Source of the DNA: Mobula hypostoma
Taxonomy: Eukaryota
Length of the DNA stretch: 64,000 nucleotides
Assembly: GCF_963921235.1 (NCBI RefSeq)
Contig: NC_086101.1
Coordinates: 31,992,001-32,056,000 of the forward strand
Direction of reading: 5' to 3'
The notes below the pieces were generated by a model. It searched no databases and was not told the origin of the DNA. It was given only the letters and a program-made list of their open reading frames with translations. Made by a program: the position numbers and the translations under genes. Shown here one piece after another: positions 10,456-60,962 of the stretch (positions are counted from its first letter, which is position 1; every line of letters starts with the position of its first letter).

Positions 10456-10468
10456 GTTCACCACTCAC

Positions 10469-10729
10469 CCCCTGTCTGGTTGGTCCGGCTCATGGCGATT
10501 GGGATGTTGGCCTTGAACCACTGATCCCATTCCTGATAGATCTGTGTGTTCCGCTCCCAGTAGTCGTCTCCCTGACTCTCCGCCATCCACTGCTGACGGG
10601 GCACCGCCTTCCCCAACTCACTGTCGTAGTAAACGATTGGCTCTTCATCCACGTACCCGACTGTCATTATCTCAGGGACTCCCGACCCCGGAGTCACCCC
10701 CGTGAAGAAATAACGGAGAGAGTGAGAGC
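10469..10729 (-). CDS. MHC class I heavy chain alpha-1 exon (exon 2), classical (UAA)-like
   Basis: 261 nt, acceptor ttccAG at 10731-10730, donor GTGAGT from 10468, phase 1/1. Translation (G)SHSLRYFFTGVTPGSGVPEIMTVGYVDEEPIVYYDSELGKAVPRQQWMAESQGDDYWERNTQIYQEWDQWFKANIPIAMSRTNQTG, no stops. Y7, YVD, YW59 and R84-T-N-Q-T are present. The lineage call is inference. Confidence 0.95.
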
Positions 10730-11103
10730 CTGGAATCGGAGCGTAGAGTTAGAGAGGCTGGGAGTCCAGATTGCAAGGAGAACCCATATCTGAAATCAGC
10801 ACCCTGAGACCCAAGTCCCTGGAGTCCACCCCCATCTTCCCCTGAGAGAATCAGGGTCCCAGAACCCGAGAATCAGGACTGACCCCTCACCCCAAGGGGA
10901 ACATTCAAAGCAGAGACAGGATCTAACTGTCCGAGACATTCTCCATTGATGGTCAGGACGTCGCTCAGTCGACAGAACCAGAGGCAACAGTGGGACAGGA
11001 GGAATTTGTGGGATCACTGATGGAGGAAAGCAATGGGAAGGGTAGGCAAAGAGGGAGCAGCCATTCTACGAGATAACATTTGGCCTTTAGTGAAGGGATT
11101 GGA

Positions 11104-12105: not shown

Positions 12106-15100
12106 ACTGCCCTCTCAAACACGTATACCGTATCGGACACTGCTGGGGGAAAAATCTCAAACACGTAAACCGTATCGGACACTGCTGGGGGAATAATCTC
12201 AAACACGTATACCGTATCAGACACTACTGGGGGAATAATCTCAAACACGTATACCGTATCGGACACTGCTGGGGAATAATCTCAAACACGTATACCGTAT
12301 CGGACACTGCTGTGGAATAATCTCAAACATGTATACCGTATCGGACACTACTGGGGGAATAATCTCAAACACGTATACCGTATCGGACACTGCTGGGGGA
12401 ATAATCTCAAACACTCTTACCGTATCGGACACTGCTGGGGGAATAATCTCAAACACGTATACCGTATCGGACACTGCTGGGGGAATAATCTCAAACACGT
12501 ATACCATATCGGACACTGCTGGGGGAATAATCTCAAACACGTATACCGTATCGGACACTGCTGGGGGAATAATCTCAAACACGTATACCATATCGGACAC
12601 TGCTGGGGGAATAATCTCAAACACGTATACCGTATCGGACACTGCTGGGGGAATAATCTCAAACACGTATACCGTATCGGACACTGCTGTGGAATAATCT
12701 CAAACACGTATACCGTATCGGACACTGCTGGGGGAATAATCTCAAACACGTATACCGTATCGGACACTGCTGGGGGAATAATCTCAAACACGTATACCGT
12801 ATCGGACACTGCTGTGGAATAATCTCAAACACGTATACCGTATCGGACACTGCTGGGGGAATAATCTCAAACACGTATACCGTATCGGACACTGCTGGGG
12901 GAATAATCTCAAACACGTATACCGTATCGGACACTACTGGGGGAATAATCTCAAACACGTATACCGTATCGGACACTACTGGGGGAATAATCTCAAACAC
13001 GTATACCGTATCGGACACTGCTGGGGAATAATCTCAAACACGTATACCGTATCGGACACTGCTGGGGGAATAATCTCAAACACGTATACCATATCGGACA
13101 CTGCTGGGGAATAATCTCAAACACGTATACCATATCGGACACTGCTGGGGGAATAATCTCAAACACGTATACTGTATCCGACACTGCTGGGGGAATAATC
13201 TCAAACACGTATACCGTATCGGACACTGCTGGGGGAATAATCTCAAACACGTATACCGTATCGGACACTGCTGGGGGAATAATCTCAAACACGTATACCG
13301 TATCGGACACTGCTGGGGAATAATCTCAAACACGTATACCGTATCGGACACTGCTGGGGAATAATCTCAAACACGTATACCGTATCGGACACTGCTGGGG
13401 GAATAATCTCAAACACGTATACCGTATCGGACACTGCTGGGGGAATAATCTCAAACACGTATACCGTATCGGACACTGCTGGGGGAATAATCTCAAACAC
13501 GTATACCGTATCGGACACTGCTGGGGGAATAATCTCAAACACGTATACCGTATCGGACACTGCTGGGGAATAATCTCAAACACGTATACCGTATCGGACA
13601 CTACTGGGGGAATAATCTCAAACACGTATACCGTATCGGACACTACTGGGGGAATAATCTCAAACACGGATACCGTATCGGACACTGCTGGGGAATAATC
13701 TCAAACACGTATACCGTATCGGACACTGCTGGGGAATAATCTCAAACACGTATACCGTATCGGACACTGCTGGGGAATAATCTCAAACACGTATACCGTA
13801 TCGGACACTGCTGGGGAATAATCTCAAACACGTATACCGTATCGGACACTACTGGGGGAATAATCTCAAACACGTATACCGTATCGGACACTGCTGGGGA
13901 ATAATCTCAAACACGTATACCGTATCGGACACTGCTGTGGAATAATCTCAAACACGTATACCGTATCGGACACTACTGGGGGAATAATCTCAAACACGTA
14001 TACCGTATCGGACACTGCTGGGGGAATAATCTCAAACACGTATACCGTATCGGACACTGCTGGGGAATAATCTCAAACACGTATACCGTATCGGACACTG
14101 CTGTGGAATAATCTCAAACACGTATACCGTATCGGACACTGCTGGGGGAATAATCTCAAACACGTATACCATATCAGACACTGCTGGGAGAATAATCTCA
14201 AACACGTATACCGTATCGGACACTACTGGGGGAATAATCTCAAACACGTATACCGTATCGGACACTGCTGTGGAATAATCTCAAACACGTATACCGTATC
14301 GGACACTACTGGGGGAATAATCTCAAACACGTATACCGTATCGGACACTACTGGGGGAATAATCTCAAACACGTATACCGTATCGGACACTGCTGGGGGA
14401 ATAATCTCAAACACGTATACCGTATCGGACACTGCTGGGGGAATAATCTCAAACACGTATACCGTATCGGACACTGCTGGGGAATAATCTCAAACACGTA
14501 TACCGTATCGGACACTGCTGGGGGAATAATCTCAAACACGTATACCGTATCGGACACTGCTGGGGGAATAATCTCAAACACGTATACCGTATCGGACACT
14601 ACTGGGGGAATAATCTCAAACACGTATACCGTATCGGACACTGCTGGGGGAATAATCTCAAACACGTATACCGTATCGGACACTGCTGGGGAATAATCTC
14701 AAACACGTATACCGTATCGGACACTGCTGGGGGAATAATCTCAAACACGTATACCGTATCGGACACTACTGGGGGAATAATCTCAAACACGTATACCGTA
14801 TCGGACACTACTGGGGGAATAATCTCAAACACGTATACCGTATCGGACACTGCTGGGGGAATAATCTCAAACACGTATACCGTATCGGACACTGCTGTGG
14901 AATAATCTCAAACACGTATACCGTATCGGACACTGCTGTGGAATAATCTCAAACACGTATACCGTATCGGACACTACTGGGGGAATAATCTCAAACACGT
15001 ATACCGTATCGGACACTGCTGGGGGAATAATCTCAAACACGTATACCGTATCGGACACTGCTGTGGAATAATCTCAAACACGTATACCGTATCGGACACT

Positions 15101-18100
15101 GCTGGGGGAATAATCTCAAACACGTATACCGTATCGGACACTACTGGGGGAATAATCTCAAACACGTATACCGTATCGGACACTGCTGGGGGAATAATCT
15201 CAAACACGTATACCGTATCGGACACTGCTGGGGGAATAATCTCAAACACGTATACCGTATCGGACACTGCTGGGGAATAATCTCAAACACGTATACCGTA
15301 TCGGACACTACTGGGGGAATAATCTCAAACACGTATACCGTATCGGACACTGCTGTGGGAATAATCTCAAACACGTATACCGTATCGGACACTACTGGGG
15401 GAATAATCTCAAACACGTATACCGTATCGGACACTGCTGTGGGAATAATCTCAAACACGTATACCGTATCGGACACTGCTGGGGGAATAATCTCAAACAC
15501 GTATACCGTATCGGACACTGCTGGGGGAATAATCTCAAACACGTATACCGTATCGGACACTGCTGGGGAATAATCTCAAACACGTATACCGTATCGGACA
15601 CTGCTGGGGAATAATCTCAAACACGTATACCGTATCGGACACTACTGGGGGAATAATCTCAAACACGTATACCGTATCGGACACTGCTGGGGGAATAATC
15701 TCAAACACGTATACCGTATCGGACACTGCTGGGGAATAATCTCAAACACGTATACCGTATCGGACACTACTGGGGGAATAATCTCAAACACGTATACCGT
15801 ATCGGACACTACTGGGGGAATAATCTCAAACACGTATACCGTATCGGACACTGCTGGGGAATAATCTCAAACACGTATACCGTATCGGACACTGCTGTGG
15901 AATAATCTCAAACACGTATACCGTATCGGACACTGCTGGGGGAATAATCTCAAACACGTATACCATATCGGACACTGCTGGGGGAATAATCTCAAACACG
16001 TATACCATATCGGACACTGCTGTGGAATAATCTCAAACACGTATACCGTATCGGACACTACTGGGGGAATAATCTCAAACACGTATACCGTATCGGACAC
16101 TGCTGGGGAATAATCTCAAACACGTATACCGTATCGGACACTACTGGGGGAATAATCTCAAACACGTATACCGTATCGGACACTACTGGGGGAATAATCT
16201 CAAACACGTATACCGTATCGGACACTGCTGTGGAATAATCTCAAACACGTATACCGTATCGGACACTACTGGGGGAATAATCTCAAACACGTATACCGTA
16301 TCGGACACTGCTGGGGAATAATCTCAAACACGTATACCGTATCGGACACTGCTGGGGGAATAATCTCAAACACGTATACCGTATCGGACACTGCTGTGGA
16401 ATAATCTCAAACACGTATACCGTATCGGACACTGCTGGGGGAATAATCTCAAACACGTATACCGTATCGGACACTGCTGGGGGAATAATCTCAAACACGT
16501 ATACCGTATCGGACACTGCTGGGGAATAATCTCAAACACGTATACCGTATCGGACACTGCTGTGGAATAATCTCAAACACGTATACCGTATCGGACACTA
16601 CTGGGGGAATAATCTCAAACACGTATACCGTATCGGACACTACTGGGGGAATAATCTCAAACACGGATACCGTATCGGACACTGCTGGGGAATAATCTCA
16701 AACACGTATACCGTATCGGACACTGCTGGGGGAATAATCTCAAACACGTATACCGTATCGGACACTGCTGGGGGAATAATCTCAAACACGTATACCGTAT
16801 CGGACACTGCTGTGGGAATAATCTCAAACACGTATACCGTATCGGACACTGCTGGGGGAATAATCTCAAACACGTATACCGTATCGGACACTACTGGGGG
16901 AATAATCTCAAACACGTATACCGTATCGGACACTGCTGGGGAATAATCTCAAACACGTATACCGTATCGGACACTGCTGGGGGAATAATCTCAAACACGT
17001 ATACCATATCGGACACTGCTGGGGGAATAATCTCAAACACGTATACCGTATCGGACACTGCTGGGGAATAATCTCAAACACGTATACCGTATCGGACACT
17101 GCTGGGGAATAATCTCAAACACGTATACCGTATCGGACACTGCTGTGGAATAATCTCAAACACGTATACCGTATCGGACACTACTGGGGGAATAATCTCA
17201 AACACGTATACCGTATCGGACACTGCTGGGGAATAATCTCAAACACGTATACCGTATCGGACACTGCTGTGGAATAATCTCAAACACGTATACCGTATCG
17301 GACACTGCTGGGGGAATAATCTCAAACACGTATACCATATCGGACACTGCTGGGGGAATAATCTCAAACACGTATACCGTATCGGACACTGCTGTGGAAT
17401 AATCTCAAACACGTATACCGTATCGGACACTACTGGGGGAATAATCTCAAACACGTATACCGTATCGGACACTACTGGGGGAATAATCTCAAACACGTAT
17501 ACCGTATCAGACACTGCTGTGGGAATAATCTCAAACACGTATACCGTATCGGACACTACTGGGGGAATAATCTCAAACACGTATACCGTATCGGACACTG
17601 CTGGGGAATAATCTCAAACACGTATACCGTATCGGACACTGCTGGGGAATAATCTCAAACACGTATACCGTATCGGACACTGCTGGGGAATAATCTCAAA
17701 CACGTATACCGTATCGGACACTGCTGGGGAATAATCTCAAACACGTATACCGTATCGGACACTGCTGTGGAATAATCTCAAACACGTATACCGTATCGGA
17801 CACTGCTGGGGGAATAATCTCAAACACGTATACCGTATCGGACACTGCTGGGGGAATAATCTCAAACACGTATACCGTATCGGACACTGCTGGGGAATAA
17901 TCTCAAACACGTATACCGTATCGGACACTGCTGGGGGAATAATCTCAAACACGTATACCGTATCGGACACTGCTGTGGAATAATCTCAAACACGTATACC
18001 GTATCGGACACTGCTGGGGGAATAATCTCAAACACGTATACCGTATCGGACACTGCTGGGGGAATAATCTCAAACACGTATACCGTATCGGACACTGCTG

Positions 18101-20744
18101 GGGAATAATCTCAAACACGTATACCGTATCGGACACTGCTGTGGAATAATCTCAAACACGTATACCGTATCGGACACTACTGGGGGAATAATCTCAAACA
18201 CGTATACCGTATCGGACACTACTGGGGGAATAATCTCAAACACGTATACCGTATCGGACACTGCTGGGGGAATAATCTCAAACACGTATACCGTATCGGA
18301 CACTGCTGTGGAATAATCTCAAACACGTATACCGTATCGGACACTGCTGTGGAATAATCTCAAACACGTATACCGTATCGGACACTGCTGTGGGAATAAT
18401 CTCAAACACGTATACCGTATCGGACACTGCTGTGGAATAATCTCAAACACGTATACCGTATCGGACACTACTGGGGGAATAATCTCAAACACGTATACCG
18501 TATCGGACACTGCTGGGGGAATAATCTCAAACACGTATACCGTATCGGACACTGCTGGGGGAATAATCTCAAACACGTATACCGTATCGGACACTGCTGG
18601 GGGAAAAATCTCAAACACGTATACCGTATCGGACACTGCTGTGGAATAATCTCAAACACGTATACCGTATCGGACACTACTGGGGGAATAATCTCAAACA
18701 CGTATACCGTATCGGACACTGCTGTGGAATAATCTCAAACACGTATACCGTATCGGACACTACTGGGGGAATAATCTCAAACACGTATACCGTATCGGAC
18801 ACTGCTGTGGGAATAATCTCAAACACGTATACCGTATCGGACACTGCTGGGGAATAATCTCAAACACGTATACCGTATCGGACACTGCTGGGGGAATAAT
18901 CTCAAACACGTATACCGTATCGGACACTGCTGGGGGAATAATCTCAAACACGTATACCGTATCGGACACTGCTGGGGAATAATCTCAAACACGTATACCG
19001 TATCGGACACTGCTGGGGAATAATCTCAAACACGTATACCGTATCGGACACTGCTGGGGAATAATCTCAAACACGTATACCGTATCGGACACTGCTGGGG
19101 AATAATCTCAAACACGTATACCGTATCGGACACTACTGGGGGAATAATCTCAAACACGTATACCGTATCGGACACTGCTGGGGAATAATCTCAAACACGT
19201 ATACCGTATCGGACACTGCTGGGGGAATAATCTCAAACACGTATACCGTATCGGACACTGCTGGGGGAATAATCTCAAACACGTATACCGTATCGGACAC
19301 TGCTGGGGAATAATCTCAAACACGTATACCGTATCGGACACTGCTGGGGAATAATCTCAAACACGTATACCGTATCGGACACTGCTGGGGAATAATCTCA
19401 AACACGTATACCGTATCGGACACTGCTGGGGGAATAATCTCAAACACGTATACCATATCGGACACTGCTGGGGAATAATCTCAAACACCTATACTGTATC
19501 CGACACTGCTGGGGGAATAACCTCAAACACGTATACCGTATCGGACACTGCTGGGGGAATAATCTCAAACACGTATACCGTATCGGACACTGCTGGGGAA
19601 TAATCTCAAACACGTATACCATATCGGACACTCTGGGGAATAATCTCAAACACGTATACCGTATCGGACACTGCTGGGGAATAATCTCAAACACGTATAC
19701 CATATCGGACACTGCTGTGGAATAATCTCAAACACGTATACCGTATCGGACACTGCTGGGGGAATAATCTCAAACACGTATACCGTATCGGACACTGCTG
19801 GGGGAATAATCTCAAACACGTATACCATATCGGACACTGCTGGGGGAATAATCTCAAACACCTATACTGTATCCGACACTGCTGGGGGAATAATCTCAAA
19901 CACGTATACCGTATCGGACACTGCTGGGGGAATAATCTCAAACACGTATACCGTATCGGACACTGCTGGGGAATAATCTCAAACACGTATACCATATCAG
20001 ACACTGCTGGGGAATAATCTCAAACACGTATACCGTATCGGACACTGCTGGGGGAATAATCTCAAACACGTATATCATATCAGACACCGCTGGGGAATAA
20101 TCTCAAACACGTATATCATATCAGACACTGCTGGGGAATAATCTCAAACACGTATACCGTATCGGACACTGCTGGGGAATAATCTCAAACACGTATACCG
20201 TATCGGACACTGCTGGGGAATAATCTCAAACACGTATACCGTATCGGACACTGCTGGGGGAATAATCTCAAACACGTATACTGTATCCGACACTGCTGGG
20301 GGAATAATCTCAAACACGTCTACCGTATCGGACACTGCTGGGGGAATAATCTCAAACACGTATACCGTATCGGACACTGCTGGGGAATAATCTCAAACAC
20401 GTATACCATATCGGACACTGCTGGGGAATAATCTCAAACACTCTTACTGTATCGGACACTGCTGGGGGAATAATCTCAAACATGTATACCATATCGGACA
20501 CTGCTGGGGGAATAATCTCAAACACGTATACCATATCAGACACTGCTGGGGAATAATCTCAAACACTCTTACCGTATCGGACACTGCTGGGGGAAAAATC
20601 TCAAACACGTATACCGTATCGGACACTGCTGGGGAATAATCTCAAACACATATACCATATCGGACACTGCTGGGGAATAATCTCAAACACGTATACCATA
20701 TCGGACACTGCTGGGGAATAATCTCAAACACGGATACCGTATCG
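12106..20744 (+). repeat. ~8.6-kb minisatellite, 41/42-bp unit CTCAAACACGTATACCGTATCGGACACTGCTGGG(G)GAATAAT
   Basis: About 200 contiguous units with no spacers. Variant units: CTACT, CTGTGG, CCATATC. Confidence 0.99.
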
Positions 20745-22373: not shown

Positions 22374-22875
22374 TCATATCAGACACCGCTGGGGAAATAA
22401 TCTCAAACACGTATACCATATCGGACACTGCTGGGGAATAATCTCAAACACGTCTACCGTATCGGACACTGCTGGGGAATAATCTCAAACACGTACACCG
22501 TATCGGACACTGCTGGGGAATAATCTCAAACACGTATACCATATCAGACACTGCTGGGGAATAATCTCAAACACGTATACCATATCGGACACTGCTGGGG
22601 AATAATCTCAAACACGTATACCGTATCGGACACTGCTGGGGAATAATCTCAAACACGTATACCGTATCGGACACTGCTGGGGAATAATCTCAAACACGTA
22701 TACCATATCGGACACTGCTGGGGAATAATCTCAAACACGTATACCATATCGGACACTGCTGGGGAAATAATCTCAAACACGTATACCATATCGGACACTG
22801 CTGGGGAATAATCTCAAACACGTATACCGTATCGGACACTGCTGGGGAATAATCTCAAACACGTATACCATATTG
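22374..22875 (+). repeat. Continuation of the 41/42-bp minisatellite
   Basis: Same unit, with more CpG-to-TpG/CpA variants. Confidence 0.97.
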
Positions 22876-31027: not shown

Positions 31028-31227
31028 NNNNNNNNNNNNNNNNNNNNNNNNNNNNNNNNNNNNNNNNNNNNNNNNNNNNNNNNNNNNNNNNNNNNNNNNN
31101 NNNNNNNNNNNNNNNNNNNNNNNNNNNNNNNNNNNNNNNNNNNNNNNNNNNNNNNNNNNNNNNNNNNNNNNNNNNNNNNNNNNNNNNNNNNNNNNNNNNN
31201 NNNNNNNNNNNNNNNNNNNNNNNNNNN
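31028..31227. other. Assembly gap (200 N)
   Basis: Run of exactly 200 N; true size unknown. Confidence 1.
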
Positions 31228-34200
31228 GAGGGAGCTTCACTCTGTGTCTGACCCCGGGAGTGTGTGATGGGAAGGTGTGGAGGGAGCTTCACCCTGTGTC
31301 TGATCCTGGGAGTGTGTGATGGGACAGTGTGGAGGGAGCTTCACTCTGTGTCTGACCCCGGGAGTGTGTGATGGGACAGTGTGGAGGGAGCTTCACTCTG
31401 TGTCTGACCCCGGGAGTGTGTGATGGGACAGTGTGGAGGGAGCTTCACTCTGTGTCTGACCCCGGGAGTGTGTGATGGGACAGTGTGGAGGGAGCTTCAC
31501 TCTGTGTCTGACCCCGGGAGTGTGTGATGGGACAGTGTGGAGGGAGCTTCACCCTGTGTCTGACCCCGGGAGTGTGTGATGGGACAGTGTGGAGGGAGCT
31601 TCACTCTGTGTCTGACCCTGGGAGTGTGTGATGGGACAGTGTGGAGGGAGCTTCACTCTGTGTCTGACCCCGGGAGTGTGTGATGGGACAGTGTGGAGGG
31701 AGCTTCACTCTGTGTCTGACCCCGGGAGTGTGTGATGGGACAGTGTGGAGGGAGCTTCACTCTGTGTCTGACCCCGGGAGTGTGTGATGGGACGGTGTGG
31801 AGGGAGCTTCACTCTGTGTCTCACCCCAGGAGTGTGTGATGGGACAGTGTGGAGGGAGCTTCACTCTGTGTCTGACCCTGGGAGTGTGTGATGGGACAGT
31901 GTGGAGGGAGCTTCACTCTGTGTCTGATCCCGGGAGTGTGTGATGGGACTGTGTGGAGGGAGCTTCACTCTGTGTCTGACCCCGGGAGTGTGTGATGGGA
32001 CAGTGTGGAGGGAGCTTCACTCTGTGTCTGACCCCGGGAGTGTGTGATGGGACAGTGTGGAGGGAGCTTCACTCTGTGTCTGACCCCGGGAGTGTGTGAT
32101 GGGACAGTGTGGAGGGAGCTTCACTCTGTGTCTGACCCCGGGAGTGTGTGATGGGACCGTGTGGAGGGAGCTTCACTCTGTGTCTGACCCCGGGAGTGTG
32201 TGATGGGACAGTGTGGAGGGAGCTTCACTCTGTGTCTGACCCCGGGAGTGTGTGATGGGACCGTGTGGAGGGAGCTTCACTCTGTGTCTGACCCCGGGAG
32301 TGTGTGATGGGACAGTGTGGAGGGAGCTTCACTCTGTGTCTGACCCTGGGAGTGTGTGATGGGACAGTGTGGAGGGAGCTTCACTCTGTGTCTGACCCCG
32401 GGAGTGTGTGATGGGACAGTGTGGAGGGAGCTTCACTCTGTGTCTGACCCCGGGAGTGTGTGATGGGACCGTGTGGAGGGAGCTTCACTCTGTGTCTGAC
32501 CCCGGGAGTGTGTGATGGGACGGTGTGGAGGGAGCTTCACTCTGTGTCTGACCCCGGGAGTGTGTGATGGGACCGTGTGGAGGGAGCTTCACCCTGTGTC
32601 TGACCCTGGGAGTGTGTGATGGGACTGTGTGGAGGGAGCTTCACTCTGTGTCTGACCCTGGGAGTGTGTGATGGGACAGTGTGGAGGGAGCTTCACTCTG
32701 TGTCTGACCCCGGGAGTGTGTGATGGGACAGTGTGGAGGGAGCTTCACTCTGTGTCTGACCCCGGGAGTGTGTGATGGGACAGTGTGGAGGGAGCTTCAC
32801 TCTGTGTCTGACCCCGGGAGTGTGTGATGGGACAGTGTGGAGGGAGCTTCACTCTGTGTTTGACCCCGGGAGTGTGTGATGGGACAGTGTGGAGGGAGCT
32901 TCACTCTGTGTCTGACCCCGGGAGTGTGTGATGGGACAGTGTGGAGGGAGCTTCACTCTGTGTCTGACCCCGGGAGTGTGTGATGGGACGGTGTGGAGGG
33001 AGCTTCACTCTGTGTCTCACCCCGGGAGTGTGTGATGGGACAGTGTGGAGGGAGCTTCACTCTGTGTCTGACCCCGGGAGTGTGTGATGGGACCGTGTGG
33101 AGGGAGCTTCACCCTGTGTCTGACCCCGGGAGTGTGTGATGGGACAGTGTGGAGGGAGCTTCACTCTGTGTCTGACCCCGGGAGTGTGTGATGGGACAGT
33201 GTGGAGGGAGCTTCACTCTGTGTCTGACCCCGGGAGTGTGTGATGGGACAGTGTGGAGGGAGCTTCACTCTGTGTCTGACCCCGGGAGTGTGTGATGGGA
33301 CCGTGTGGAGGGAGCTTCACTCTGTGTCTGACCCCGGGAGTGTGTGATGGGACCGTGTGGAGGGAGCTTCACTCTGTGTCTGACCCCGGGAGTGTGTGAT
33401 GGGACGGTGTGGAGGGAGCTTCACTCTGTGTCTTACCCCGGGAGTGTGTGATGGGACAGTGTGGAGAGAGATTCACTCTGTGTCTGATCCTGGGAGTGTG
33501 TGATGAGACAGTGTGGAGGGAGCTTCACTCTGTGTTTTACCCCGGGAGTGTGTGATGAGACCGTGTGGAGGGAGCTTCACTCTGTGTTTTACCCCGGGAG
33601 TGTGTGATGGGACCGTGTGGAGGGAGCTTCACTCTGTGTTTTACCCCGGGAGTGTGTGATGAGACCGTGTGGAGGGAGCTTCACTCTGTGTTTTACCCCG
33701 GGAGTGTGTGATGAGACCGTGTGGAGGGAGCTTCACCCTGTGTTTTATCCCGGGAGTGTGTGATGGGACCGTGTGGAGGGAGCTTCACCCTGTGTTTTAC
33801 CCGGGAGTGTGTGATGGGACCGTGTGGAGGGAGCTTCACCCTGTGTTTTACCCCGGGAGTGTGTGATGGGACGTGTGGAGGGAGCTTCACTCTGTGTTTT
33901 ACCCCGGGAGTGTGTGATGGGACCGTGTGGAGGGAGCTTCACCTCTGTGTTTGACCCCGGGAGTGTGTGATGAGACCGTGTGGAGGGAGCTTCACTCTGT
34001 GTTTTACCCCGGGAGTGTGTGATGAGACCGTGTGGAGGGAGCTTCACTCTGTGTCTCACCCCTGGAGTGTGTGATGGGACAGTGTGGAGGGAGCTTCACT
34101 CTGTGTCTGACCCCGGGAGTGTGTGATGGGACCGTGTGGAGGGAGCTTCTCTCTGTGTCTGACCCCGGGAGTGTGTGATGGGACAGTGTGGAGGGAGCTT

Positions 34201-34720
34201 CACTCTGTGTCTGACCGCGGGAGTGTGTGATGAGACCATGTGGCGGGAGCTTCACCCTGTGTTTTACCCCGGGAGTGTGTGATGAGACAGTGTGGAGGGA
34301 GCTTCACCCTGTGTTTTACCCCGGGAGTGTGTGATGGGACCGTGTGGAGGGAGTTTCACTCTGTGTCTGACCCCGGGAGTGTGTGATGGGACCTTGTGGA
34401 GAGAGCTTCACCCTGTGTTTTACCCTGAGAGTGTGTGATGAGACCGTGTGGAGGGAGCTGCACGCTGTGTTTTACCCCGGGGAGTGTGTGGTGCGACCGT
34501 GTGGAGGGAGCTTCACTCTGTGTTTCACCCCGGGAGTGTGTGATGAGACCGTGTGGAGAGAGCTTCACCTTGTGTTTCACCCCGGGAGTGTGTGGTGCGA
34601 CCATGTGGAGGGAGCTTCACCCCGTGTTTTACCCCGGGAGTGTGTGATGAGACCGTGTGGAGGGAGCTTCACCCTGTGTTTTACCCCGGGAGTGTGTGAT
34701 GAGACCGTGTGGAGGGAGCT
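31228..34720 (+). repeat. 52-bp satellite GGAGGGAGCTTCACTCTGTGTCTGACCCCGGGAGTGTGTGATGGGACAGTGT
   Basis: Period 52 (e.g. 31321 vs 31373). Units diverge from ~33500 onward. Confidence 0.99.
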
Positions 34721-34944
34721 CCAGGGAACCAGGGAACTGTTATTGTGTTGTTCTATGTAATAGGTTGAATTTAATCTGTTCATGAATTTAGAGACAAATT
34801 AATGAAAACCTGGAGCTCGCGATGGTCTGAAATAAACTGTTTGACGAATCGGCGCCTTCTCATCAACGAGACAAAGTGTCATGTTACTCTGAGCCGGCTA
34901 TAAATTGCGAGCTCGGCAGCGTTTGATCGGAGGGAGAGCAGAAC

Positions 34945-35023
34945 CGATCCTGTACGAAAAGATCTTCCCCGACAACTGGTGACGCGACAGATACCGTGTG
35001 CTCATTGGTTGTTGGAAAGTCCG
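34945..35023 (+). promoter_or_regulatory. MHC-type S-X1-X2-Y module with adjacent kappaB-like site
   Basis: CGATCCT (34945-51), 16 nt, CCCGACAACTGGTG (34968-81) overlapping TGACGCG, 19 nt, CTCATTGG (35001), then TGGAAAGTCCG (reverse CGGACTTTCC, 9/10 to GGGACTTTCC). CpG-rich context. Confidence 0.7.
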
Positions 35024-35398
35024 CGGTTAACGGAGCGTGGTGTGACACGTCAAGCATTGCCGTTAAACACAATAGATCTATTCAAAGTGTTAACGTCAAC
35101 AAAAGGGCAAAAGTTAAATGAAGGGCGGGAGTGGCAGCTCAGGGTGCAGAGCCATCAGCAGTGATGGGGGGCGGGGGGTCGGAGACGGCATTCCCTCGCT
35201 GACCTTCGTGGATGGAGACCCTGGGCCATCCCTTTGCTGAGGTATACCACACAGCAGACGTTCTTCTTGTAATTTCAAAACTAAACTTTATTCATAATAA
35301 AATATATAAGACATAGGAGCAGAATTAGACCATTCAGCCCATCGAGTCTGCTCCACCATTCTATCAAGGCTGATCCCAGATCCCACTCAACCCCCTAC

Positions 35399-35900
35399 CA
35401 GACATCCCACCCTGCAAAAACTCATTTCAGGGAGATGGCACCATCAATTTGCGGGAGACTCCCGAAACTTCTGGGAGAGGTGGGATGTCTGCAATAGAGT
35501 AGCTCCTTAGCAGCTAGCCAGCTAGTTTAAATAACGTTAGCTATGCTAATGAACGAATGACACCTGTTAAACTCACCTCAACATGTCATTTACAGTCTTA
35601 ACCCACCATGGGCAATAGAAAAGTCACTGTTGCAAGCAGTGCAGCGAGCAACACTGTCATTATTTTTGACCCCTATTAGGCAGGGGTACACTTTAGTGTA
35701 GTCTGGGGTGACGTACGTTTTATATTTTCTTTTTTTGGAACACTCTGCCATGGCGCGCACGCTCTCTCTCTCTCTCTCTCGCGTGCTCTCGCTCTCAAAA
35801 AAATTGATTTCCGTGATATTGTATATAATTTGCAGGCATCAGGGAGCCACTCTTAATATGCGGAAGACTCCCGGAACTTCCAGGAGAGGTGGGATGTCTG
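35399..35900. mobile_element. MITE-like element inside a CR1 3' fragment
   Basis: Inverted ends CAGACATCCCACC / GGTGGGATGTCTG. The right end is also repeated internally at ~35445-35491. Confidence 0.6.
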
Positions 35901-36759
35901 CCATACACCTGCCTTCTCGCCATATCCTTTGATACCTTGACCAATCAGAAAATGCTCAACTTCCGCCTTAAATATAGGCAAGGATGGCCTCCACCACAGT
36001 CAGTGGCAGATCATTCCACAGATTTACTACTCTCTGGCTAAAAAAAAAATCCCTCCTTACCTCTGTTTTAAAAGGTTGTCCCTCAGTGTTGAGGCTGTGC
36101 CCTCTAGTTCTAAATACCTCCCCACTGTAGGAATCATCCTCTCCACATCCACCCTATCTTGTCCTTTCAATATTTGGTAGGTTTCAATGAGACCCCCCCC
36201 ACCCCGCCCCGCATTCTTCTCAATTCCAGTGAGTACAGGCCCAAAGCTGTCAAATGCTCCTCATAAGTTAACCCCTTCATTCCCAGAATCATCCTCGTGA
36301 ATCTTCTCTGGACTCTCTTCAATCATAACACATCCTTTCAGAGATATGGGGCCCAAAACTGTTGACAATACTCCAAGTGCGGCCTGACTAAAGTGTAAAC
36401 TAAGTGTAAACATTTTACATTCTACATCATGTCAATACATTCTGTAATGTTAACTTATTAGAAATACATAGCATCCTCGGCCTTCATACAACCCCAGCTC
36501 TGATACACAATTTCAGTGTTTGAGGTCAGTACAATTATAGATGAAATTTGAATTAGGAAATTTAAAATAATGAGGAAGTTAGTGATTGCTGCAAAAAGTT
36601 TATAGAATTGCATCACATAATCATTGAGTATGTGGTAAATAAAACATTGCTATTACAAATTCTGCAGTCGAGTATCCCACATTTGGGGACATCCAGCGGT
36701 CATCAGGCCCGGAGGGGAATGGGATAACATCCTCCTGAGCTTTTTCTATTTCAAAAAAA

Positions 36760-37650
36760 AACTTTATTCATAACAAAACATGCATAATAATGAGAAACTG
36801 CAGAACTTTTACATCTATAGGAAGAGGTACAGTCGACGTTTTGGGCCGAGACCCTTCGTCAGGACTAACTGAAAGAAGAAATAGTAAGAGATTTGAAAGT
36901 GGGAGGGGGAGGGGGAGATCCAAAATGATAGGAGAAGACAGGAGGGGGAGGGATGGAGTTAAGAGCTGGAAAGTTGATTGGTAAGGGATACGAGAGGATC
37001 ATGGAACGGGAGGCCTAGGGAGAAAGAAAGGGTGAGGGGGGAAGCCCAGAGGATGGGCAAGGAGTATAGTGAGAGGGACAGAGGGAGAAAAAGGAGAGAG
37101 AGAAAAAGAATGTGTGTATATAAATAAATAACGGGTGGGGTACGAAGGGGAGGTGGGGCATTAACGGAAGTTAGAGAAGTCAATGTTCATGCCATCAGGT
37201 TGGAGGCTACCCAGACGGAATATAAGGTGTTGTTCCTCCAACCTGAGTGTGGCTTCATCTTTGCAGTAGAGGAGGCCGTGGATAGACATATCAGAATGGG
37301 AATGGGACGTGGAATTAAAATGTGTGGCCACTGGGAGATCCTGCTTTCTCTGGCGGACAGAGCATCGGTGTTCAGCAAAACGATCTCTCAGTCTGCGTCG
37401 GGTCTCGCCAATATACAGAAGGCCGCATTGGGAGCACCGGACGCAGTATATCACCCCAGTCGACTCACAGGTGAAGTGTCGCCTCACCTGGAAGGACTGT
37501 CTGGGGGCCTGAATGGTGGTGAGGGAGGAAGTGTAAGGGCATGTGTAGCACTTGTTCCACTTACAAGTATAAGTGCCGGGAGGGAGATTAGTGGGAAGGG
37601 ATGGCGGGATGGGGGAACGAATGGACAAGGGAGTTGCGTAGGTTCAGGAA
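36760..37650 (-). mobile_element. Penelope-like element 3' part with intact GIY-YIG endonuclease ORF fragment
   Basis: ORF 37161..37628: HFTCESTGVIYCVRCSQCGLLYIGETRRRLRDRFAEH...EQHLIFRLGSLQPDGMN. Confidence 0.93.
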
Positions 37651-52082: not shown

Positions 52083-54765
52083 GGGCATTGTTGTTTCCAC
52101 AGTGAGCTGTGATGTAGCCAGTCAATGTACATTCCATCACACACCTATAGAAGTTTTTCAAAGATTTAGATGTCATGCCAAATCTTTGCAAGCTCCTAAA
52201 CATTTCATTTGGGACAACTCTCAAAGAACAAACTGAAATTGAGAAAATAGCCAGAATTCAATATACAACACACATAAAAGTTGCTGGTGAACGCAGCAGG
52301 CCAGGCAGCATCTCCAGGAAGAGGTCCAGTTGACGTTTCGGGCCAAGACCCTTCGTCAGGACTAACTGAAAGAAGAGCTAGTAAGAGATTTGAAAGTGGT
52401 GGGGGGCGGGCGGGATCCGAAGATTCAATGTGTTTATTTAGGACACAATGTCACTTACTTGGGGCAGGAGACTGTTTCCAAACAGTCTCACTAATCTCAG
52501 TCGTGTAGTCGTTAGACACTACACTGTGCTTACAGCGATCAGTTTTTAAATAGTCTCAGTTGCATATGTTTGTGTTCAAAAAGCAGTGATTTTTGTCACT
52601 GATAGCTGACAAAAAATAAGCAGTAGGAGAATTTGGAACCGTTTTGCTCACTGCAGTTTCAAGCATTCAGGCTTGGTAATGCCAGAAAAGGCTGGGAGTG
52701 AAAATGAAATGATTGCACTACTGCAACAAGTTAGGAATTACAGAAGTATGGACAATCATCTTGAATATTCAATGAAAGTGAAGATTTAGAGAATGCAATG
52801 GTCTAAAGTATTGAATGAAGACAATCCATTATCTGCACTAGATAGATAGATAAATAAATAAATAGATACTTTATTGATCCCAAAGGAAATTACAATGTCA
52901 CAGTAGCATTACAAGTGCACACATATGCAAATATTAGAAGGGAAATAAGAAAGAATTTTAAAAAGTTATTTAAAAAAAGATGTACAAGATTTACAAGTCA
53001 AAGGTTACAAGATTATCCAGATTTCCAAGTTCACACTGATCAGTTGGCACTGCAAGAATTACCATAATATTATACAGTAATGGTGCACATTCACACTGTC
53101 CAGATAAGAAGTGATGGTAGTATTGCACAGAATTGTGCAGGGTGTCCGCAATAGTGGGGTGTAGTAAACATAGATAAACAGAGCTCTGGTAAAAGAAGAT
53201 AACAACTTCCCTGGCAATAGGCTGACTCATCATAGAGCCTAATGGCCGAGGGTAAGAATTACTCTTTGGAGCGGCAGTTGTCTTAGTCTATGACTGAAAG
53301 TGCTCCTCTGTTCATCCAGGCTGGCATACAGAGGGTGAGAAACATTGTCCAGAATTACCAGAATTTTCTGGGGGTCCTTTGTTGTATCTCAGTCTCTGGT
53401 GTGTCCAGTTTGACTCCTATAACAGAGCCAGCCTCTCTAATCATTTTACTGAGCCTATTGACATCACCCCTGTTGATGCCATTACCCGAGCACACCATCA
53501 CATACAAGATACTGGTGACAACAGGCTGCTGGAACGTGTGAAGAAGAGGCCTGCATACTCCAAAGGACCTCAGTCTCCTCAGGAAGTAGAGGTGGCTCTG
53601 GCCCTTCCTGTACACAGACTCACTAGGTGCTGTGCTGATTGTGTTCATTTACAGTCTTGCCTTGTCTTGTCTTGTCCATATTGCACAGTCAAAAGACCAT
53701 GGCCGATAAATTCCTCCACTGATAGCTATTAGGAACTAGTACACAGATTGATAGTACTGTAGAGTTATTGGTAGTGTTCTAATTTGTTCTGTTTTGCATT
53801 TAAATGCACAAATTGATACTCAGTTAAATGGTAGCTTCTCTTTTTTTATGCCTTTTGACTATCTCCATGGAATGTCGGCTAATCGGACAGCTGTTTGATT
53901 GGGCCAAGATGTACTGGTCCCCACGTGTCCCAATTAACTGGAACCTACCGTATTGCAGTCAGTGAACAATAGTCTGCCGTTGGTGCTTTCTCTGTCCAGG
54001 TGCTCCAGGGATGAGTGCAGGGCTGGGGATGTGACATCTGCCAAAGACCCTTTTCGGCATGCAGCAATTACAGTGGGTCTAGTTTGTCTGGGAGGCTGGA
54101 GTTAATAAGCGCCATGAATAGCCTCTTGAAGCACTTCAGGATGGTGGAAAGCAGAGACATGTCATTACTTACATTACTTATTATTTCTTAGATACAGGAA
54201 TGTTAGTGGTCAGTCAGAGTCTGTTTCCCGGGGTGGAAGGTCAAACATTAGAAGGCACAGGTTTAAAGTGAGAGAGGCAAAGTTTAAAGGAGATTTGTGG
54301 GCCGGTTGTTTTTCCACAGAAAGTGGTGGATCCCCGAATGTGCTGCCAGAGAGGCAAATACGACAGAGGCATCGGACAGACTCGTAAACAGGCAGGGAGT
54401 GGAGGGACACGGAACATGCGGGCAGGTGGAATTAGCTGGATCCCATTATGGAGGACACAGACGTGCTGGGCCGAAGTCTCTCCTGGGGCCATTCGGGTAA
54501 TCAGCCGCTGAAAGTTGTTCCCCGTGCCTGGTTCTTGGTACTGTGTCCCCGTTTCTGGGTAGCACCCATAGGTGCTCTCCGCAGCAAACTGCAAATTCGG
54601 GATCTACCCGACAACAAGTGACGCTGAGCGCTGCCCTCGCTGATTGGCTGGAGGCAGCCGCTGTTTTTGGGGAACTATTGTCCAGTTTCAAAGCCTGGGA
54701 AACCCCCCCCCCCAACCCCTTTCCGAGACTCGGGGTGTCACCCTGCCGTACTTTTTGAGGGATTT
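52083..54765 (+). repeat. Tandem segmental duplication, unit A
   Basis: Colinear similarity with 54776-60740, e.g. GGGCATTGTTGTTTCCACAG vs GGTCATTGTTGTTTCCACAG, CAGTGATTTTTGTCACTGA, AAAAGACCATGGCCGATAAATTCC and the terminal CpG segment. Confidence 0.9.
54607..54649 (+). promoter_or_regulatory. Duplicated X1-X2-Y module (unit A copy)
   Basis: CCCGACAACAAGTG, 19 nt, CTGATTGGCT. X and Y are identical to the 60606 copy. Confidence 0.7.
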
Positions 54766-59510: not shown

Positions 59511-60605
59511 ATGAGCCAAAAGACCATGGCCGATAAATTCCTTCATTGATAACTATTAGGCACTAGTACACAAATTGATAGTACTGTAGAGTTATTGGTA
59601 GTGTCCTAATTTGTTCTGTTTTGCATTTAAATTCACAAATTGATACTCAGTTAAATGGTAGCTTGTCTTTTTTTTATACCTTTTAACTATCTCCATGAAA
59701 TGTCGGCTAATTGGGACAGCTGTTTAATTGGGCCAAGGTGTACTGGTCCCCACGTGTCCCAATTAACTGGAACCTACCGTATAGCAGTCAGTGAACAATA
59801 GTCTGACGTTGGTGCTTTCTCTGTCCAGGTGCTCCAGGGATGAGTGCCGGGCTGGGGATGTGACATCTGCCAAAGACCCTTTTCGGCATGCAGCAATTGC
59901 AGTGGGTCGAGTTTCTCTGGGAGGCTGGAGTTAATGAACGCTTTGACATGGCTCTTGAAGCACTTCAAGATAGTGAATGTCAAAGGCACTAGCTGTAGAC
60001 TTTATTACATTACTTGTTATTTCTCAGCTACAGGGATGTTAGTGGTCTTCTTAAAACAGTCCGGGGGCCTCAGATTGAAGTAGGGAGAGGTTAGAAATAT
60101 CTGCAAATGTGCAGGTAAGGGGGTGGAGAGGTGAAGGAAATGAAGAAGTAAGGAGGTGGCGAGTGGAGCGACAGAGAGGTGAGGGAAGGAGAGGGGTCAG
60201 ACAGTCAGAGTCTGTTTCCCGGGGTGAAAGGTCAAACACTAGAGGGCACAGGTTTAAAGTGCGAGAGACAAAGTTTAAAGGAGATATGTGGGCCGGTTGT
60301 TTTTCCACAGAAAGTGATGGGTCCCCGAATGTGCTGCCAGCGAGGCAAATAGGACAGAGGCATCGGACAGACTCGTGAACAGGCAGGGAGTGGAGGGATA
60401 CGGAACGTGCAGGCAGGTGGAATTAGATGGATCCCATTATGGAGGACACAGACATGCTGGGCCGAAGTCTCTCCAGGGGTCAATCGGGTAATCGGCCGCT
60501 GATAATTGTACCCCGTGCCCGGTCCCTGGCGCCACCTACAGGTGCTCCCCGTTTTGCGTGGCACCTGCAGGTGCTCTCCGCAGCAAAGTGCAGATTCGGG
60601 ATCTA

Positions 60606-60648
60606 CCCGACAACAAGTGACGCTGGGCGCTGCCCTCGCTGATTGGCT
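60606..60648 (+). promoter_or_regulatory. X1-X2-Y module upstream of the probable PSMB9 exon 1
   Basis: CCCGACAACAAGTG (TGACGC X2), 19 nt, CTGATTGGCT; lies in a CpG island. Confidence 0.75.
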
Positions 60649-60814
60649 GGAAGCAGCCGCAGTTTTGGGGGACTCTTGTCCAGTTTCAAAGCCTGGGAAC
60701 CCCTCAACCCCTTTCCGAGACTCGGGGTGTCATCCTGCCGTCCTGCTGTGGATCGGGATCAGGGTGGGGGTGTGTGGGGCGGTGCTCTGTACCCTCCTGT
60801 CCCGTTCCGGCTGT

Positions 60815-60832
60815 ACTTTCTGTTTCACTTCT
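60815..60832 (+). promoter_or_regulatory. ISRE / IRF element ACTTTCTGTTTCACTTCT
   Basis: The reverse strand reads AGAAGTGAAACAGAAAGT (tandem GAAA cores). It contains GTTTCACTTCT like the mouse class I ISRE, ~75 bp before the ATG. Confidence 0.75.
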
Positions 60833-60908
60833 GTGCCGGACACTGCCCCAGACGGCGGACGGGAGAGAGTAGACGGCCCACGGGAGAGAGTAGACGGCCC
60901 ACAGCGAG

Positions 60909-60962
60909 ATGCAGACGACATCGGGACTCATCGGCGGTTCTACCGTGCCAGTTACCACCGGG
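60909..60962 (+). CDS. psmb9: Probable exon 1 (propeptide) of immunoproteasome subunit beta-1i/LMP2: MQTTSGLIGGSTVPVTTG
   Basis: An 18-codon exon ends in V-T-T-G followed by donor GTAGGT at 60963 (phase 0). This matches the PSMB9/PSMB6 layout, where exon 1 stops at Gly-1 before catalytic Thr1. ISRE, X-Y promoter and class I linkage favour PSMB9. Exon 2 (TTIMAVEF-like) was not found in the window, so the call is provisional. Confidence 0.6.

What the first reader, a model, noticed from the sequence alone, without database searches (positions are those of the whole stretch)
34945..35023. Orphan S-X1-X2-Y plus kappaB module with mammalian-style spacing
Seen: S-like CGATCCT, 16 nt, CTTCCCCGACAACTGGTGACGCG, 19 nt, CTCATTGG, then a 9/10 kappaB match. 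Known: HLA-DRA has GGACCCT-16 nt-CCTAGCAACAGATG-20 nt-CTGATTGG, and class I promoters have TGACGCG and CATTGG. These bind RFX, CREB/ATF and NF-Y and recruit CIITA/NLRC5 in a spacing-dependent way. Its flanks are unrelated to the 54.6/60.6-kb copies, yet CCCGACAAC, GTGACGC and the 19-nt spacer are shared, which argues for selection. No coding exon was found next to it. It may be a distal enhancer, the promoter of a lost gene, or the remote class I promoter.
Basis: partly seen in the sequence, partly recalled or inferred. Interest (0 to 1): 0.75.

Follow-up and report, generated by a model that had tools for sequence, protein, structure and literature searches.

The report
Gene-less MHC X-Y switch in ray
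A short docking site of the kind that switches on MHC genes really sits alone between a ray's class I gene and a probable PSMB9 gene. It looks like a kept regulatory element, but no gene lies next to it and its activity is untested.

Summary
The X1-X2-Y core is real. CCCGACAAC, then 3 nt, TGACGCG, 14 nt and CTCATTGG lie at 34968-35008. This repeats, without a gap, the boxes and spacing of the modules at 54.6 and 60.6 kb. Identity is 23/24 in the boxes, 2/17 in the spacers and 28% in the flanks. A relaxed composite pattern is expected 0.01 times per window.

The module lies in a 540-bp single-copy island between a 52-bp satellite and a very high-copy transposon. It is not a dispersed repeat. 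The island is not CpG-depleted (o/e 0.98, background 0.35) and holds four CRE half-sites and two GC boxes. Contigs from two other species carry it at about 95% identity.

The S box (5/7) and the kappaB match are not above chance. The quoted 16/19-nt gaps hold only for a 14-nt X box. I found no exon, RNA family or RNA contig. The nearest coding exons are a class I alpha1 exon 24 kb to the left and a putative PSMB9 exon 1 26 kb to the right.

Best reading: an intergenic enhancer, or stranded promoter, of the RFX/CREB/NF-Y enhanceosome type. Activity and target are untested. The scan noted a similar orphan module elsewhere in this genome (s1-141975).

The parts
34721..35262 (.). Single-copy island that is not CpG-depleted. 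It holds the module and lies between the 52-bp satellite (31228-34720) and transposon sequence (from about 35262, very high copy from about 35306).
   Evidence: One contig at depth 7.5 in the source run, against 1e5-1e6 from 35267 on. CpG o/e 0.98 with 31 CpG; only 1 of 901 non-satellite windows reaches this. No other similarity within the window.
34945..34951 (+). S-like heptamer CGATCCT, 16 nt before X1. Unproven.
   Evidence: 5/7 to the HLA-DRA S box as I recall it. Chance of this at a fixed place is 0.013. No counterpart at the same place in the 54.6/60.6-kb modules.
34968..34976 (+). X1-like box CCCGACAAC (putative RFX site; the core GACAAC has A where RGYAAC has G).
   Evidence: Identical 9/9 to 54607-54615 and 60606-60614.
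34980..34986 (+). X2 box TGACGCG, a CRE-like half-site 3 nt after X1.
   Evidence: GTGACGC is identical in all three modules. The X1-X2 gap of 3 nt equals that of HLA-DRA (my recall of that promoter).
35001..35008 (+). Y box CTCATTGG, an inverted CCAAT. The reverse strand reads AACCAATGA, which fits RRCCAATSR.
   Evidence: 7/8 to CTGATTGG of the other modules, at the same distance from X2 (14 nt).
35014..35023 (+). kappaB-like decamer GGAAAGTCCG (reverse strand CGGACTTTCC), 5 nt after Y. Not above chance.
   Evidence: 9/10 to GGGRNNYYCC. There are 54 matches of that looseness in the window against 100 expected. The 9-mer core is expected 0.68 times.
34899..34905 (+). TATA-like TATAAAT, 40 nt upstream of the S-like box. 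On the - strand it lies downstream of kappaB-CCAAT-CRE.
   Evidence: Sequence. Significance not tested.
34842..35098 (.). Cluster of four CRE half-sites (TGACG or CGTCA at 34842, 34980, 35048, 35094), X2 included.
   Evidence: 4 observed against 0.31 expected from the non-satellite rest of the window; Poisson p = 3e-4.
35123..35174 (+). Two GC boxes (GGGCGG at 35123 and 35169), downstream of the module.
   Evidence: Sequence. Significance not tested.
35212..35241 (+). Only exon-like feature: ATG plus 9 codons ending at AG|GTATAC. No support as a real exon.
   Evidence: Sequence. No Pfam hit. No gene on record for the island ORFs that were looked up. No RNA contig holds the island.
60606..60646 (+). 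Comparator: the X1-X2-Y module about 260 bp upstream of a putative PSMB9 first exon (60909-60962, MQTTSGLIGGSTVPVTTG, then GT).
Evidence: No exon 2 lies inside the window.
54607..54647 (+). Comparator: a young duplicate of the 60.6-kb module (upstream region 91.4% identical). It lacks the exon.
10461..10748 (-). Context: MHC class I alpha1 exon, the nearest coding exon on the left, transcribed away from the island.
   Evidence: Pfam MHC_I, E = 5.6e-20. Sequence.

Best explanation
The stretch is a genuine cis-regulatory module of the MHC enhanceosome type, made of X1, X2 and Y boxes. It lies in a small, single-copy island that has kept its CpGs. The island sits about midway in the roughly 50-kb spacer, full of satellites and transposons, between a class I gene (- strand) and a probable PSMB9 gene (+ strand). 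It shares only its three boxes and their exact register with the module in front of the PSMB9 exon. It is therefore an old relative (or a convergent twin) of that promoter module whose boxes were kept while everything else was replaced. Proposed mechanism, inferred and not shown: an RFX-type complex binds X1, a CREB/ATF factor binds X2, and NF-Y binds Y. They bind cooperatively because the boxes keep the fixed spacing. The platform then recruits an NLRC5- or CIITA-like co-activator and acts at a distance on neighbouring antigen-presentation genes. This would be like the distal S'-Y' enhancers and X-box-like sequences of the mammalian class II region. Its origin is most likely the promoter of a gene that is no longer there.
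For: The exact box and spacing match to the 54.6/60.6-kb modules is confined to the boxes: 23/24 in boxes, 2/17 in spacers (Fisher p = 3e-8), 28% in 400 nt of flanks. A relaxed X1-X2-Y pattern gives 3 observed against 0.01 expected. The island is single-copy, not a repeat. Its CpG o/e is 0.98, against a window median of 0.35; only 1 of 901 non-satellite windows reaches that value (the putative PSMB9 exon-1 CpG island comes next, at up to 0.95). The boxes themselves keep four CpGs. CRE half-sites are enriched (4 against 0.31, p = 3e-4) and two GC boxes follow. The satellite-island-transposon arrangement is shared with organism B, and the module-centred 224 nt is about 95% identical in organism C, a species that lacks the expansion of the adjacent SINE. 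Published background: S-X of 16 bp and X-Y of 20-22 bp are typical of NLRC5-occupied modules, spacing is critical, and Tap1/Psmb9 share one NLRC5 peak (PMC4374748). Intergenic RFX/CIITA-bound enhancers are known near class II genes (PMC2278383, references 36 and 37).
Against: No transcription-factor binding, chromatin or reporter data exist. None of the three same-species runs guessed to be RNA holds any word of the island. X1 has A at the conserved G of RGYAAC. The S box, which decides NLRC5 specificity in mouse, is not demonstrable. Between organisms A and B the island as a whole is more diverged (29/611 differences plus 18 gap letters) than the neighbouring unique piece (5/356; Fisher p = 0.006), so there is no island-wide constraint. 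Where the differences fall relative to the boxes could not be read. Intact boxes and retained CpGs would also be seen for some time after loss of function.
Confidence: 0.5

Rival explanations
1. Dead relic. The island is the stranded promoter of a gene that was lost, or was separated from it by satellite growth and transposon insertions. It has no present function, and the boxes are intact only because too little time has passed.
For: No exon or gene remnant within 24 kb on either side. A transposon starts about 250 bp after the Y box, which is where the 60.6-kb module has its exon. No RNA contig holds the island.
Against: The flanks and spacers have diverged to random identity while 23/24 box positions are kept. 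That implies long selection on the boxes after the split from the PSMB9-type module. The CpGs, including four inside the boxes, have not decayed in a genome with CpG o/e of 0.35. The arrangement predates the split from organism B.
Confidence: 0.28
2. Live promoter of an unannotated transcript. The island drives a non-coding RNA or a gene with very short exons. It could run rightwards (S-X-Y, then GC boxes, ATG at 35212, donor at 35242) or leftwards (on the - strand the order is kappaB, CCAAT, CRE, TATA at 34899-34905).
For: CpG-island-like composition, CRE cluster, GC boxes, a TATA-like box, and one ATG-plus-donor feature.
Against: None of three same-species runs guessed to be RNA holds any word of the island. 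No Rfam family matches. No Pfam hit and no gene on record for the island ORFs. The ORFs are short and low in complexity. The flanks are a satellite and transposons.
Confidence: 0.12
3. Remote upstream promoter or dedicated enhancer of the class I gene whose alpha1 exon lies at 10461-10748 on the - strand.
For: That gene has no recognisable canonical S-X-Y in the 130 bp before its putative leader ATG, and a tRNA-like SINE lies just upstream. Read on the - strand, the island has kappaB upstream and TATA downstream and points towards the class I gene. TGACGCG and CATTGG are the class I forms of X2 and Y (my recall of HLA-B).
Against: It is 24 kb away, behind a 3.5-kb and an 8.6-kb satellite array and an assembly gap. 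The S-to-Y direction points the other way. The X1 box is the PSMB9-module form. The class I gene has its own leader exon in the right splice phase. Only leader and alpha1 were found in the window, so it may be a fragment.
Confidence: 0.06
4. Chance cluster of common motifs (CRE half-site, CCAAT, an A/C-rich 9-mer) in a CpG-rich patch, unrelated to the enhanceosome.
For: CRE half-sites and CCAAT boxes are common in CpG-rich promoters. S and kappaB are at chance level. The X1 core is non-canonical.
Against: The exact composite shared with the 60.6-kb module is expected 4e-9 times in this window and 2e-4 times in 6e9 positions. The relaxed version is expected 0.01 times per window.
Confidence: 0.04

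Closest known systems
Distal S'-Y' enhancers and X-box-like (XL) sequences of the mammalian MHC class II region (Krawczyk et al. 2004; Gomez et al. 2005; cited in PMC2278383)
   Same: An X-Y type module inside the MHC, away from any promoter. The mammalian ones bind RFX and CIITA and act at a distance. Like them, this one is intergenic, single-copy, and shares its box grammar with nearby promoters.
   Different: This one lies in a class I / PSMB9 context in a cartilaginous fish. Its X2 and Y are of the class I form. No binding or looping data exist. The S box is unproven. The X1 core is GACAAC.
NLRC5-type SXY module of MHC class I, B2m and Tap1/Psmb9 promoters (Ludigs et al. 2015, PMC4374748)
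   Same: An X box followed by a CRE-like X2 and an inverted CCAAT at fixed spacing (S-X 16 bp, X-Y about 20 bp). Association with a PSMB9-type promoter module. A rare composite whose spacing matters.
   Different: It is not within a few hundred bp of a start site. The S box, the determinant of NLRC5 specificity in mouse, cannot be recognised. X-Y is 19 nt by the 14-mer convention. Nothing is known here of ray NLRC5 or RFX5.
HLA-DRA proximal S-X-Y promoter
   Same: The same order and nearly the same spacing: X1 core, 3 nt, X2; X-Y 19 against 20 nt; S-X 16 nt (comparison from my recall of the DRA sequence).
   Different: 9/14 identity in the X box. A different X2 orientation and sequence. There is no class II gene and no gene at all behind it.
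The in-window modules at 54607-54647 and 60606-60646 (in front of the putative PSMB9 exon 1, plus its young duplicate)
   Same: Identical X1 9-mer, identical GTGACGC, Y 7/8, the same gap-free register, and a kappaB-like site downstream of Y in all three.
   Different: No similarity outside the boxes. The orphan has TGACGCG and CTCATTGG in place of TGACGCT and CTGATTGG. Its kappaB-like site lies 5 nt after Y rather than about 50 nt. It has no ISRE and no exon behind it.

Membership tests
MHC S-X1-X2-Y enhanceosome module | X1 box with an RFX half-site (RGYAAC) preceded by a C-rich stretch | tested here: inconclusive
   CCCGACAAC has GACAAC, 5/6 to RGYAAC with A at the conserved G. The same variant stands in front of the putative PSMB9 exon, so it may be the local form of the box.
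MHC S-X1-X2-Y enhanceosome module | X2 box: a CRE-like TGACG half-site 2-3 nt after X1 | tested here: met
   TGACGCG at 34980-34986, 3 nt after the AAC of X1.
MHC S-X1-X2-Y enhanceosome module | Y box: an inverted CCAAT with NF-Y flanks, about 18-22 nt after the X box | tested here: met
   CTCATTGG at 35001-35008. The reverse strand reads AACCAATGA. It lies 19 nt after the 14-mer X box and 14 nt after X2, the same register as the 60.6-kb module. Published range 20-22 bp.
MHC S-X1-X2-Y enhanceosome module | S box 15-17 nt upstream of X1 | tested here: inconclusive
   CGATCCT lies at the right distance (16 nt) but is only 5/7 to the DRA S box (p = 0.013 at a fixed place). It has no counterpart in the sister modules.
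MHC S-X1-X2-Y enhanceosome module | Lies within a few hundred bp upstream of the start site of an antigen-presentation gene | tested here: not met
   No exon or Pfam-recognisable remnant within 24 kb on either side. Hence it is filed as an orphan or distal module, not a promoter module.
MHC S-X1-X2-Y enhanceosome module | Occupied by RFX5/RFXAP/RFXANK, CREB/ATF and NF-Y; recruits CIITA or NLRC5 | not testable with these tools
   Needs ChIP or CUT&Tag, EMSA and reporter assays.
Distal S'-Y' / XL intergenic MHC enhancers | An X-Y type module inside the MHC but outside promoters, single-copy | tested here: met
   Intergenic position and single-copy depth.
Distal S'-Y' / XL intergenic MHC enhancers | Enhancer activity and long-range contact with MHC promoters | not testable with these tools
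   Needs a reporter assay, 3C/Hi-C, or deletion.
Dispersed repeat / transposon-borne motif | Many copies in the genome at 80% identity or more | tested here: not met
   One contig at depth 7.5 for 34731-35266, against summed depth of 1e5-1e6 from 35267 on, in the source run and in organism B. No other copy in the window.
CpG-island-like promoter or enhancer | CpG o/e of 0.6 or more over at least 200 bp in a CpG-depleted genome | tested here: met
   o/e 0.98 over 536 bp (peak 1.36), against a median of 0.35. G+C is only 49-54%, below the classical 55%.
CpG-island-like promoter or enhancer | A transcription start site or transcript | tested here: not met
   No RNA-run contig holds the island. 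Weak test: three small runs whose RNA status is only guessed and whose tissue is unknown.

The most novel reading that the evidence does not exclude
The island is the remnant of an ancestral shared control region between a divergently transcribed class I gene and PSMB9, comparable to the mammalian TAP1/PSMB9 bidirectional promoter. It still works as a locus-control-like enhanceosome site. That would show two things for a cartilaginous fish: that the X1-3 nt-X2-14 nt-Y grammar was already fixed, and that gene-less modules already served as distal enhancers. Both would then date to the origin of the jawed-vertebrate MHC.
Probability: 0.15. Interest if true: 0.7.

Novelty: new member of a known kind. 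Interest (0 to 1): 0.45.

Why it matters
How MHC class I pathway genes are co-regulated outside mammals is poorly known. In salmon the enhanceosome even seems dispensable for interferon induction (PMC7573153). My literature searches found no paper describing SXY modules in cartilaginous fish. This is a single-copy, CpG-preserved X1-X2-Y module that shares only its boxes with the module in front of a probable PSMB9 gene. It gives a concrete, testable site for two questions. Was enhanceosome control with mammalian spacing already present in the oldest living jawed-vertebrate lineage? Did orphan modules act as distal enhancers there? If it is only a relic, it still records promoter turnover in a ray MHC that is being remodelled by satellites and transposons.

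Tried and rejected
1. Dispersed repeat: rejected by depth.

2. Homology of the island to anything else in the window: only the 18-nt box match was found.

3. A hidden gene.
- Pfam scans covered all + strand ORFs of 40 aa or more from 35.1 to 54.5 kb, and all - strand ORFs from 20.75 to 31.0 kb. They gave only reverse transcriptase and one marginal zinc-finger hit.
- Regex searches for proteasome, class I alpha2/alpha3 and ABC motifs found nothing.

4. Exact look-up of two island ORFs in the gene-position collection: not on record. I therefore did not spend a homology search on them.

5. Structured RNA: no Rfam match.

6. RNA evidence: none of the listed runs holds the island.

7. Base-level footprint in organisms B and C: not obtainable. 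The list of differing letters was filled by transposon positions, and the read laying cap is one call.

8. My own first reading of run X9 as possible RNA or an open-chromatin library (note). I withdrew it (note). The run looks like a low-coverage shotgun assembly with a mean contig of about 260 nt.

9. Verifying the PSMB9 label: not possible, because no second exon lies before 64000.

10. Search of earlier findings by sequence: blank, which means nothing.

11. The N run 31028-31227 was left untouched.

Full report
**Setting.** Earlier notes call this genome a ray, and one follow-up calls it a devil ray. I did not verify the species.

Map of the window:
- A 36-bp satellite at 1-1223.
- An MHC class I alpha1 exon on the - strand at 10461-10748 (Pfam MHC_I, E = 5.6e-20). 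A plausible leader exon lies about 190 bp upstream in the right splice phase.
- A 42-bp satellite at 12113-20744.
- An N run at 31028-31227, left untouched.
- A 52-bp satellite at 31228-34720.
- The island that holds the finding.
- Transposon sequence, including a LINE reverse transcriptase.
- Two X-Y modules at 54607 and 60606.
It ends in TTG followed by GT, as PSMB9 propeptide exons do. No second exon lies inside the window, so I could not confirm the label.

**The observation.** All the quoted strings are present. The spacings as literally written do not fit the strings as literally written. The gaps around the quoted 23-mer are 12 and 14 nt. The figures 16 and 19 are right once the X box is taken as the 14-mer 34968-34981, the counterpart of the HLA-DRA X box.

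With that convention:
- S-X is 16 nt.
- The X1 core to X2 gap is 3 nt.
- X-Y is 19 nt.

Published values for NLRC5-occupied modules are 16 and 20-22 bp (PMC4374748). From my recall of the sequence, DRA has 16, 3 and 20.

**Is it more than chance?** Yes for X1-X2-Y, no for S and kappaB.
- CCCGACAAC-N3-TGACGC occurs exactly three times in the window, all on the + strand.
- A deliberately relaxed pattern (RRYAAC, 2-5 nt, TGACG, 10-20 nt, ATTGG) gives the same three sites against 0.01 expected in Markov-1 simulations.
- The exact composite shared with the 60.6-kb module is expected 2e-4 times in 6e9 positions.
- The S-like heptamer is 5/7 to the DRA S box (p = 0.013 at a fixed place). It has no counterpart in the sister modules.
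- The kappaB-like decamer belongs to a class with 54 matches in the window against 100 expected.
- In mammalian class I promoters the kappaB site lies upstream of SXY, not after Y.
- The sister modules also carry a kappaB-like site after Y (GGGAAACCCC at 54697 in the 54.6-kb copy, and the corresponding GGGAACCCCT, 9/10, in the 60.6-kb copy). That is a hint and no more.

**Relation to the other modules.** In a gap-free register the orphan and the 60.6-kb module agree at 23 of 24 box positions. They agree at 2 of 17 spacer positions (Fisher p = 3e-8) and at 28% of 400 flanking positions, which is random. blastn of the island against the rest of the window finds nothing but that 18-nt stretch.

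The 54.6- and 60.6-kb copies are a young tandem duplicate, 91.4% identical over 444 aligned nt. So the orphan is not a recent copy. Either it is an old relative whose boxes alone were kept, or it arose independently under the same binding constraints. Identity at all nine X1 positions, including the non-consensus ones, favours common descent. This last step is inference.

**Not a repeat.** I laid Logan contigs of four runs on 34731-36730 at 80% likeness.
- In the source sample a single contig covers 34731-35333 with no differences, at depth 7.5.
- From 35267 on, the summed depth is 1e5-1e6, which marks a very abundant SINE or transposon.
- Organism B has one contig covering 34731-35341. It runs out of the satellite on one side and into the transposon on the other, so the arrangement predates the split of A and B.
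- Organism C has a 224-nt contig equal to 34843-35066, with 10 differences and 2 gaps. In that run the SINE is about 500-fold less abundant relative to the island than in A or B. C therefore seems to lie outside the clade in which the SINE expanded.

**Limits of the cross-species evidence.**
- The table of differing letters was filled by transposon positions, so I cannot say whether substitutions avoid the boxes.
- Between A and B the island as a whole is more diverged (29 differences plus 18 gap letters in 611 nt) than the neighbouring unique piece 36375-36730 (5 in 356; p = 0.006).
- There is thus no island-wide constraint. CpG richness, the adjacent satellite and MHC haplotype diversity are possible causes.

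**Independent signs of a regulatory element.**
- The window is strongly CpG-depleted (median o/e 0.35-0.39). The island has o/e 0.98 (31 CpG in 536 bp, peak 1.36 at 34801-35100).
- Among 901 non-satellite windows of the same size only one reaches that value. The next-highest windows belong to the CpG island at the putative PSMB9 exon 1.
- Four of the retained CpGs lie inside S, X1 and X2.
- TGACG/CGTCA half-sites occur four times in the island against 0.31 expected (p = 3e-4).
- Two GGGCGG boxes follow at 35123 and 35169.
- Retained CpGs in a methylated vertebrate genome usually mean germline hypomethylation, as at promoters and bound enhancers. That is an inference from general knowledge, not a measurement.

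**No gene.**
- Every + strand ORF of 40 aa or more between 35.1 and 54.5 kb, and every - strand ORF between 20.75 and 31.0 kb, was scanned against Pfam. Only reverse transcriptase and one marginal zinc-finger hit appeared.
- The island's own ORFs are short and of low complexity. The two that were looked up are on record nowhere.
- Rfam finds nothing.
- No run holding the island is on record as RNA. Three same-species runs guessed to be RNA hold none of its words. This is a weak test.
- The only exon-like feature is ATG 35212 plus nine codons and a GT at 35242. It has no support.
- In the 60.6-kb promoter the exon starts about 260 bp after the Y box. In the orphan, transposon sequence starts about 250 bp after Y.

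**Best explanation (confidence 0.5).** The stretch is a real X1-X2-Y module of the enhanceosome type, kept by selection on its boxes. It lies alone about midway between a class I gene transcribed leftwards and a probable PSMB9 gene transcribed rightwards. It most likely began as the promoter of a gene that is gone, and it works, or worked until recently, as an intergenic enhancer.

The proposed mechanism is cooperative assembly of RFX, CREB/ATF and NF-Y, followed by recruitment of an NLRC5- or CIITA-like co-activator. The closest precedents are the distal S'-Y' enhancers and the X-box-like sequences of the mammalian class II region.

- Shown: the sequence, its non-randomness, its copy number, its composition, its presence in two other species, and the absence of a recognisable gene.
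- Inferred: binding, activity and target.

**Rivals.**
- A functionless relic (0.28).
- A live promoter of an unannotated transcript on either strand (0.12). On the - strand the order is kappaB, CCAAT, CRE, TATA.
- A remote promoter or dedicated enhancer of the class I gene (0.06). That gene has no canonical SXY before its leader, and a tRNA-like SINE lies just upstream. But it lies 24 kb away behind two satellites and a gap, and the S-to-Y direction points away from it.
- Chance (0.04).

**Verdict.** The finding is real and moderately interesting. It is a new member of a known kind: an orphan or distal MHC X-Y module, here in a cartilaginous fish. The S and kappaB parts and any claim of activity remain unproven. 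The scan had already noted a comparable gene-less SXY module on another piece of this genome (s1-141975), so this is not unique within the genome.

Noticed in passing
window 10461-10748 (- strand), leader about 10889-10937: An intact MHC class I alpha1 exon (GSHSLRYF...) with a possible leader exon (MSRTVRSCLCFECSPW) in the right splice phase. No alpha2 or alpha3 exon was found in the window, and LINE sequence fills 2.6-8.6 kb. It may be a fragment or a gene with very long introns. A tRNA-like SINE lies about 200 bp upstream, and no canonical SXY stands before the leader.
   Followed up: partly
window 31228-34720, 12113-20744, 22375-22873, 1-1223: Three large satellite arrays (52-bp, 42-bp and 36-bp units at 90-96% matches) occupy about 13 kb of the window, about 12 kb of it in the class I-PSMB9 spacer. 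The 52-bp array abuts the N run 31028-31227. The 42-bp array is CpG-rich (o/e 1.29), which suggests recent amplification.
   Followed up: partly
window 54300-54760 versus 60300-60760: The region upstream of the putative PSMB9 exon is tandemly duplicated (91.4% identity over 444 nt). The upstream copy keeps the X1-X2-Y module and an exact kappaB consensus (GGGAAACCCC at 54697) but loses similarity before the ISRE and the exon. It is thus a second, young orphan module.
   Followed up: partly
window 35267-36400: An extremely abundant SINE or transposon (summed contig depth 1e5-1e6 in two species). It carries a nested insertion of about 509 bp (35392-35900) that many genomic copies lack, as shown by joints. 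The family is about 500-fold rarer in organism C.
   Followed up: no
window 35262-35305 and 36740-36780: A near-duplicate of about 30 nt (ATTTCAAAA..ACTTTATTCATAA.AAAA) brackets the SINE block. The second copy continues into a dispersed element that recurs at about 30.1, 36.8 and 52.3 kb. It may be a long target-site duplication, or two starts of the same element.
   Followed up: no
window 60812-60836: An ISRE-like ACTTTCTGTTTCACTTC lies about 75 bp before the ATG of the putative PSMB9 exon 1. The orphan island has no comparable ISRE.
   Followed up: no
window 34731-35341 versus 36375-36730 (organism B contigs): The divergence between species A and B is about three times higher in the island (4.7% plus indels) than in the unique piece 1.1 kb away (1.4%). 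Possible causes are CpG decay in one lineage or old MHC haplotype lineages.
   Followed up: partly
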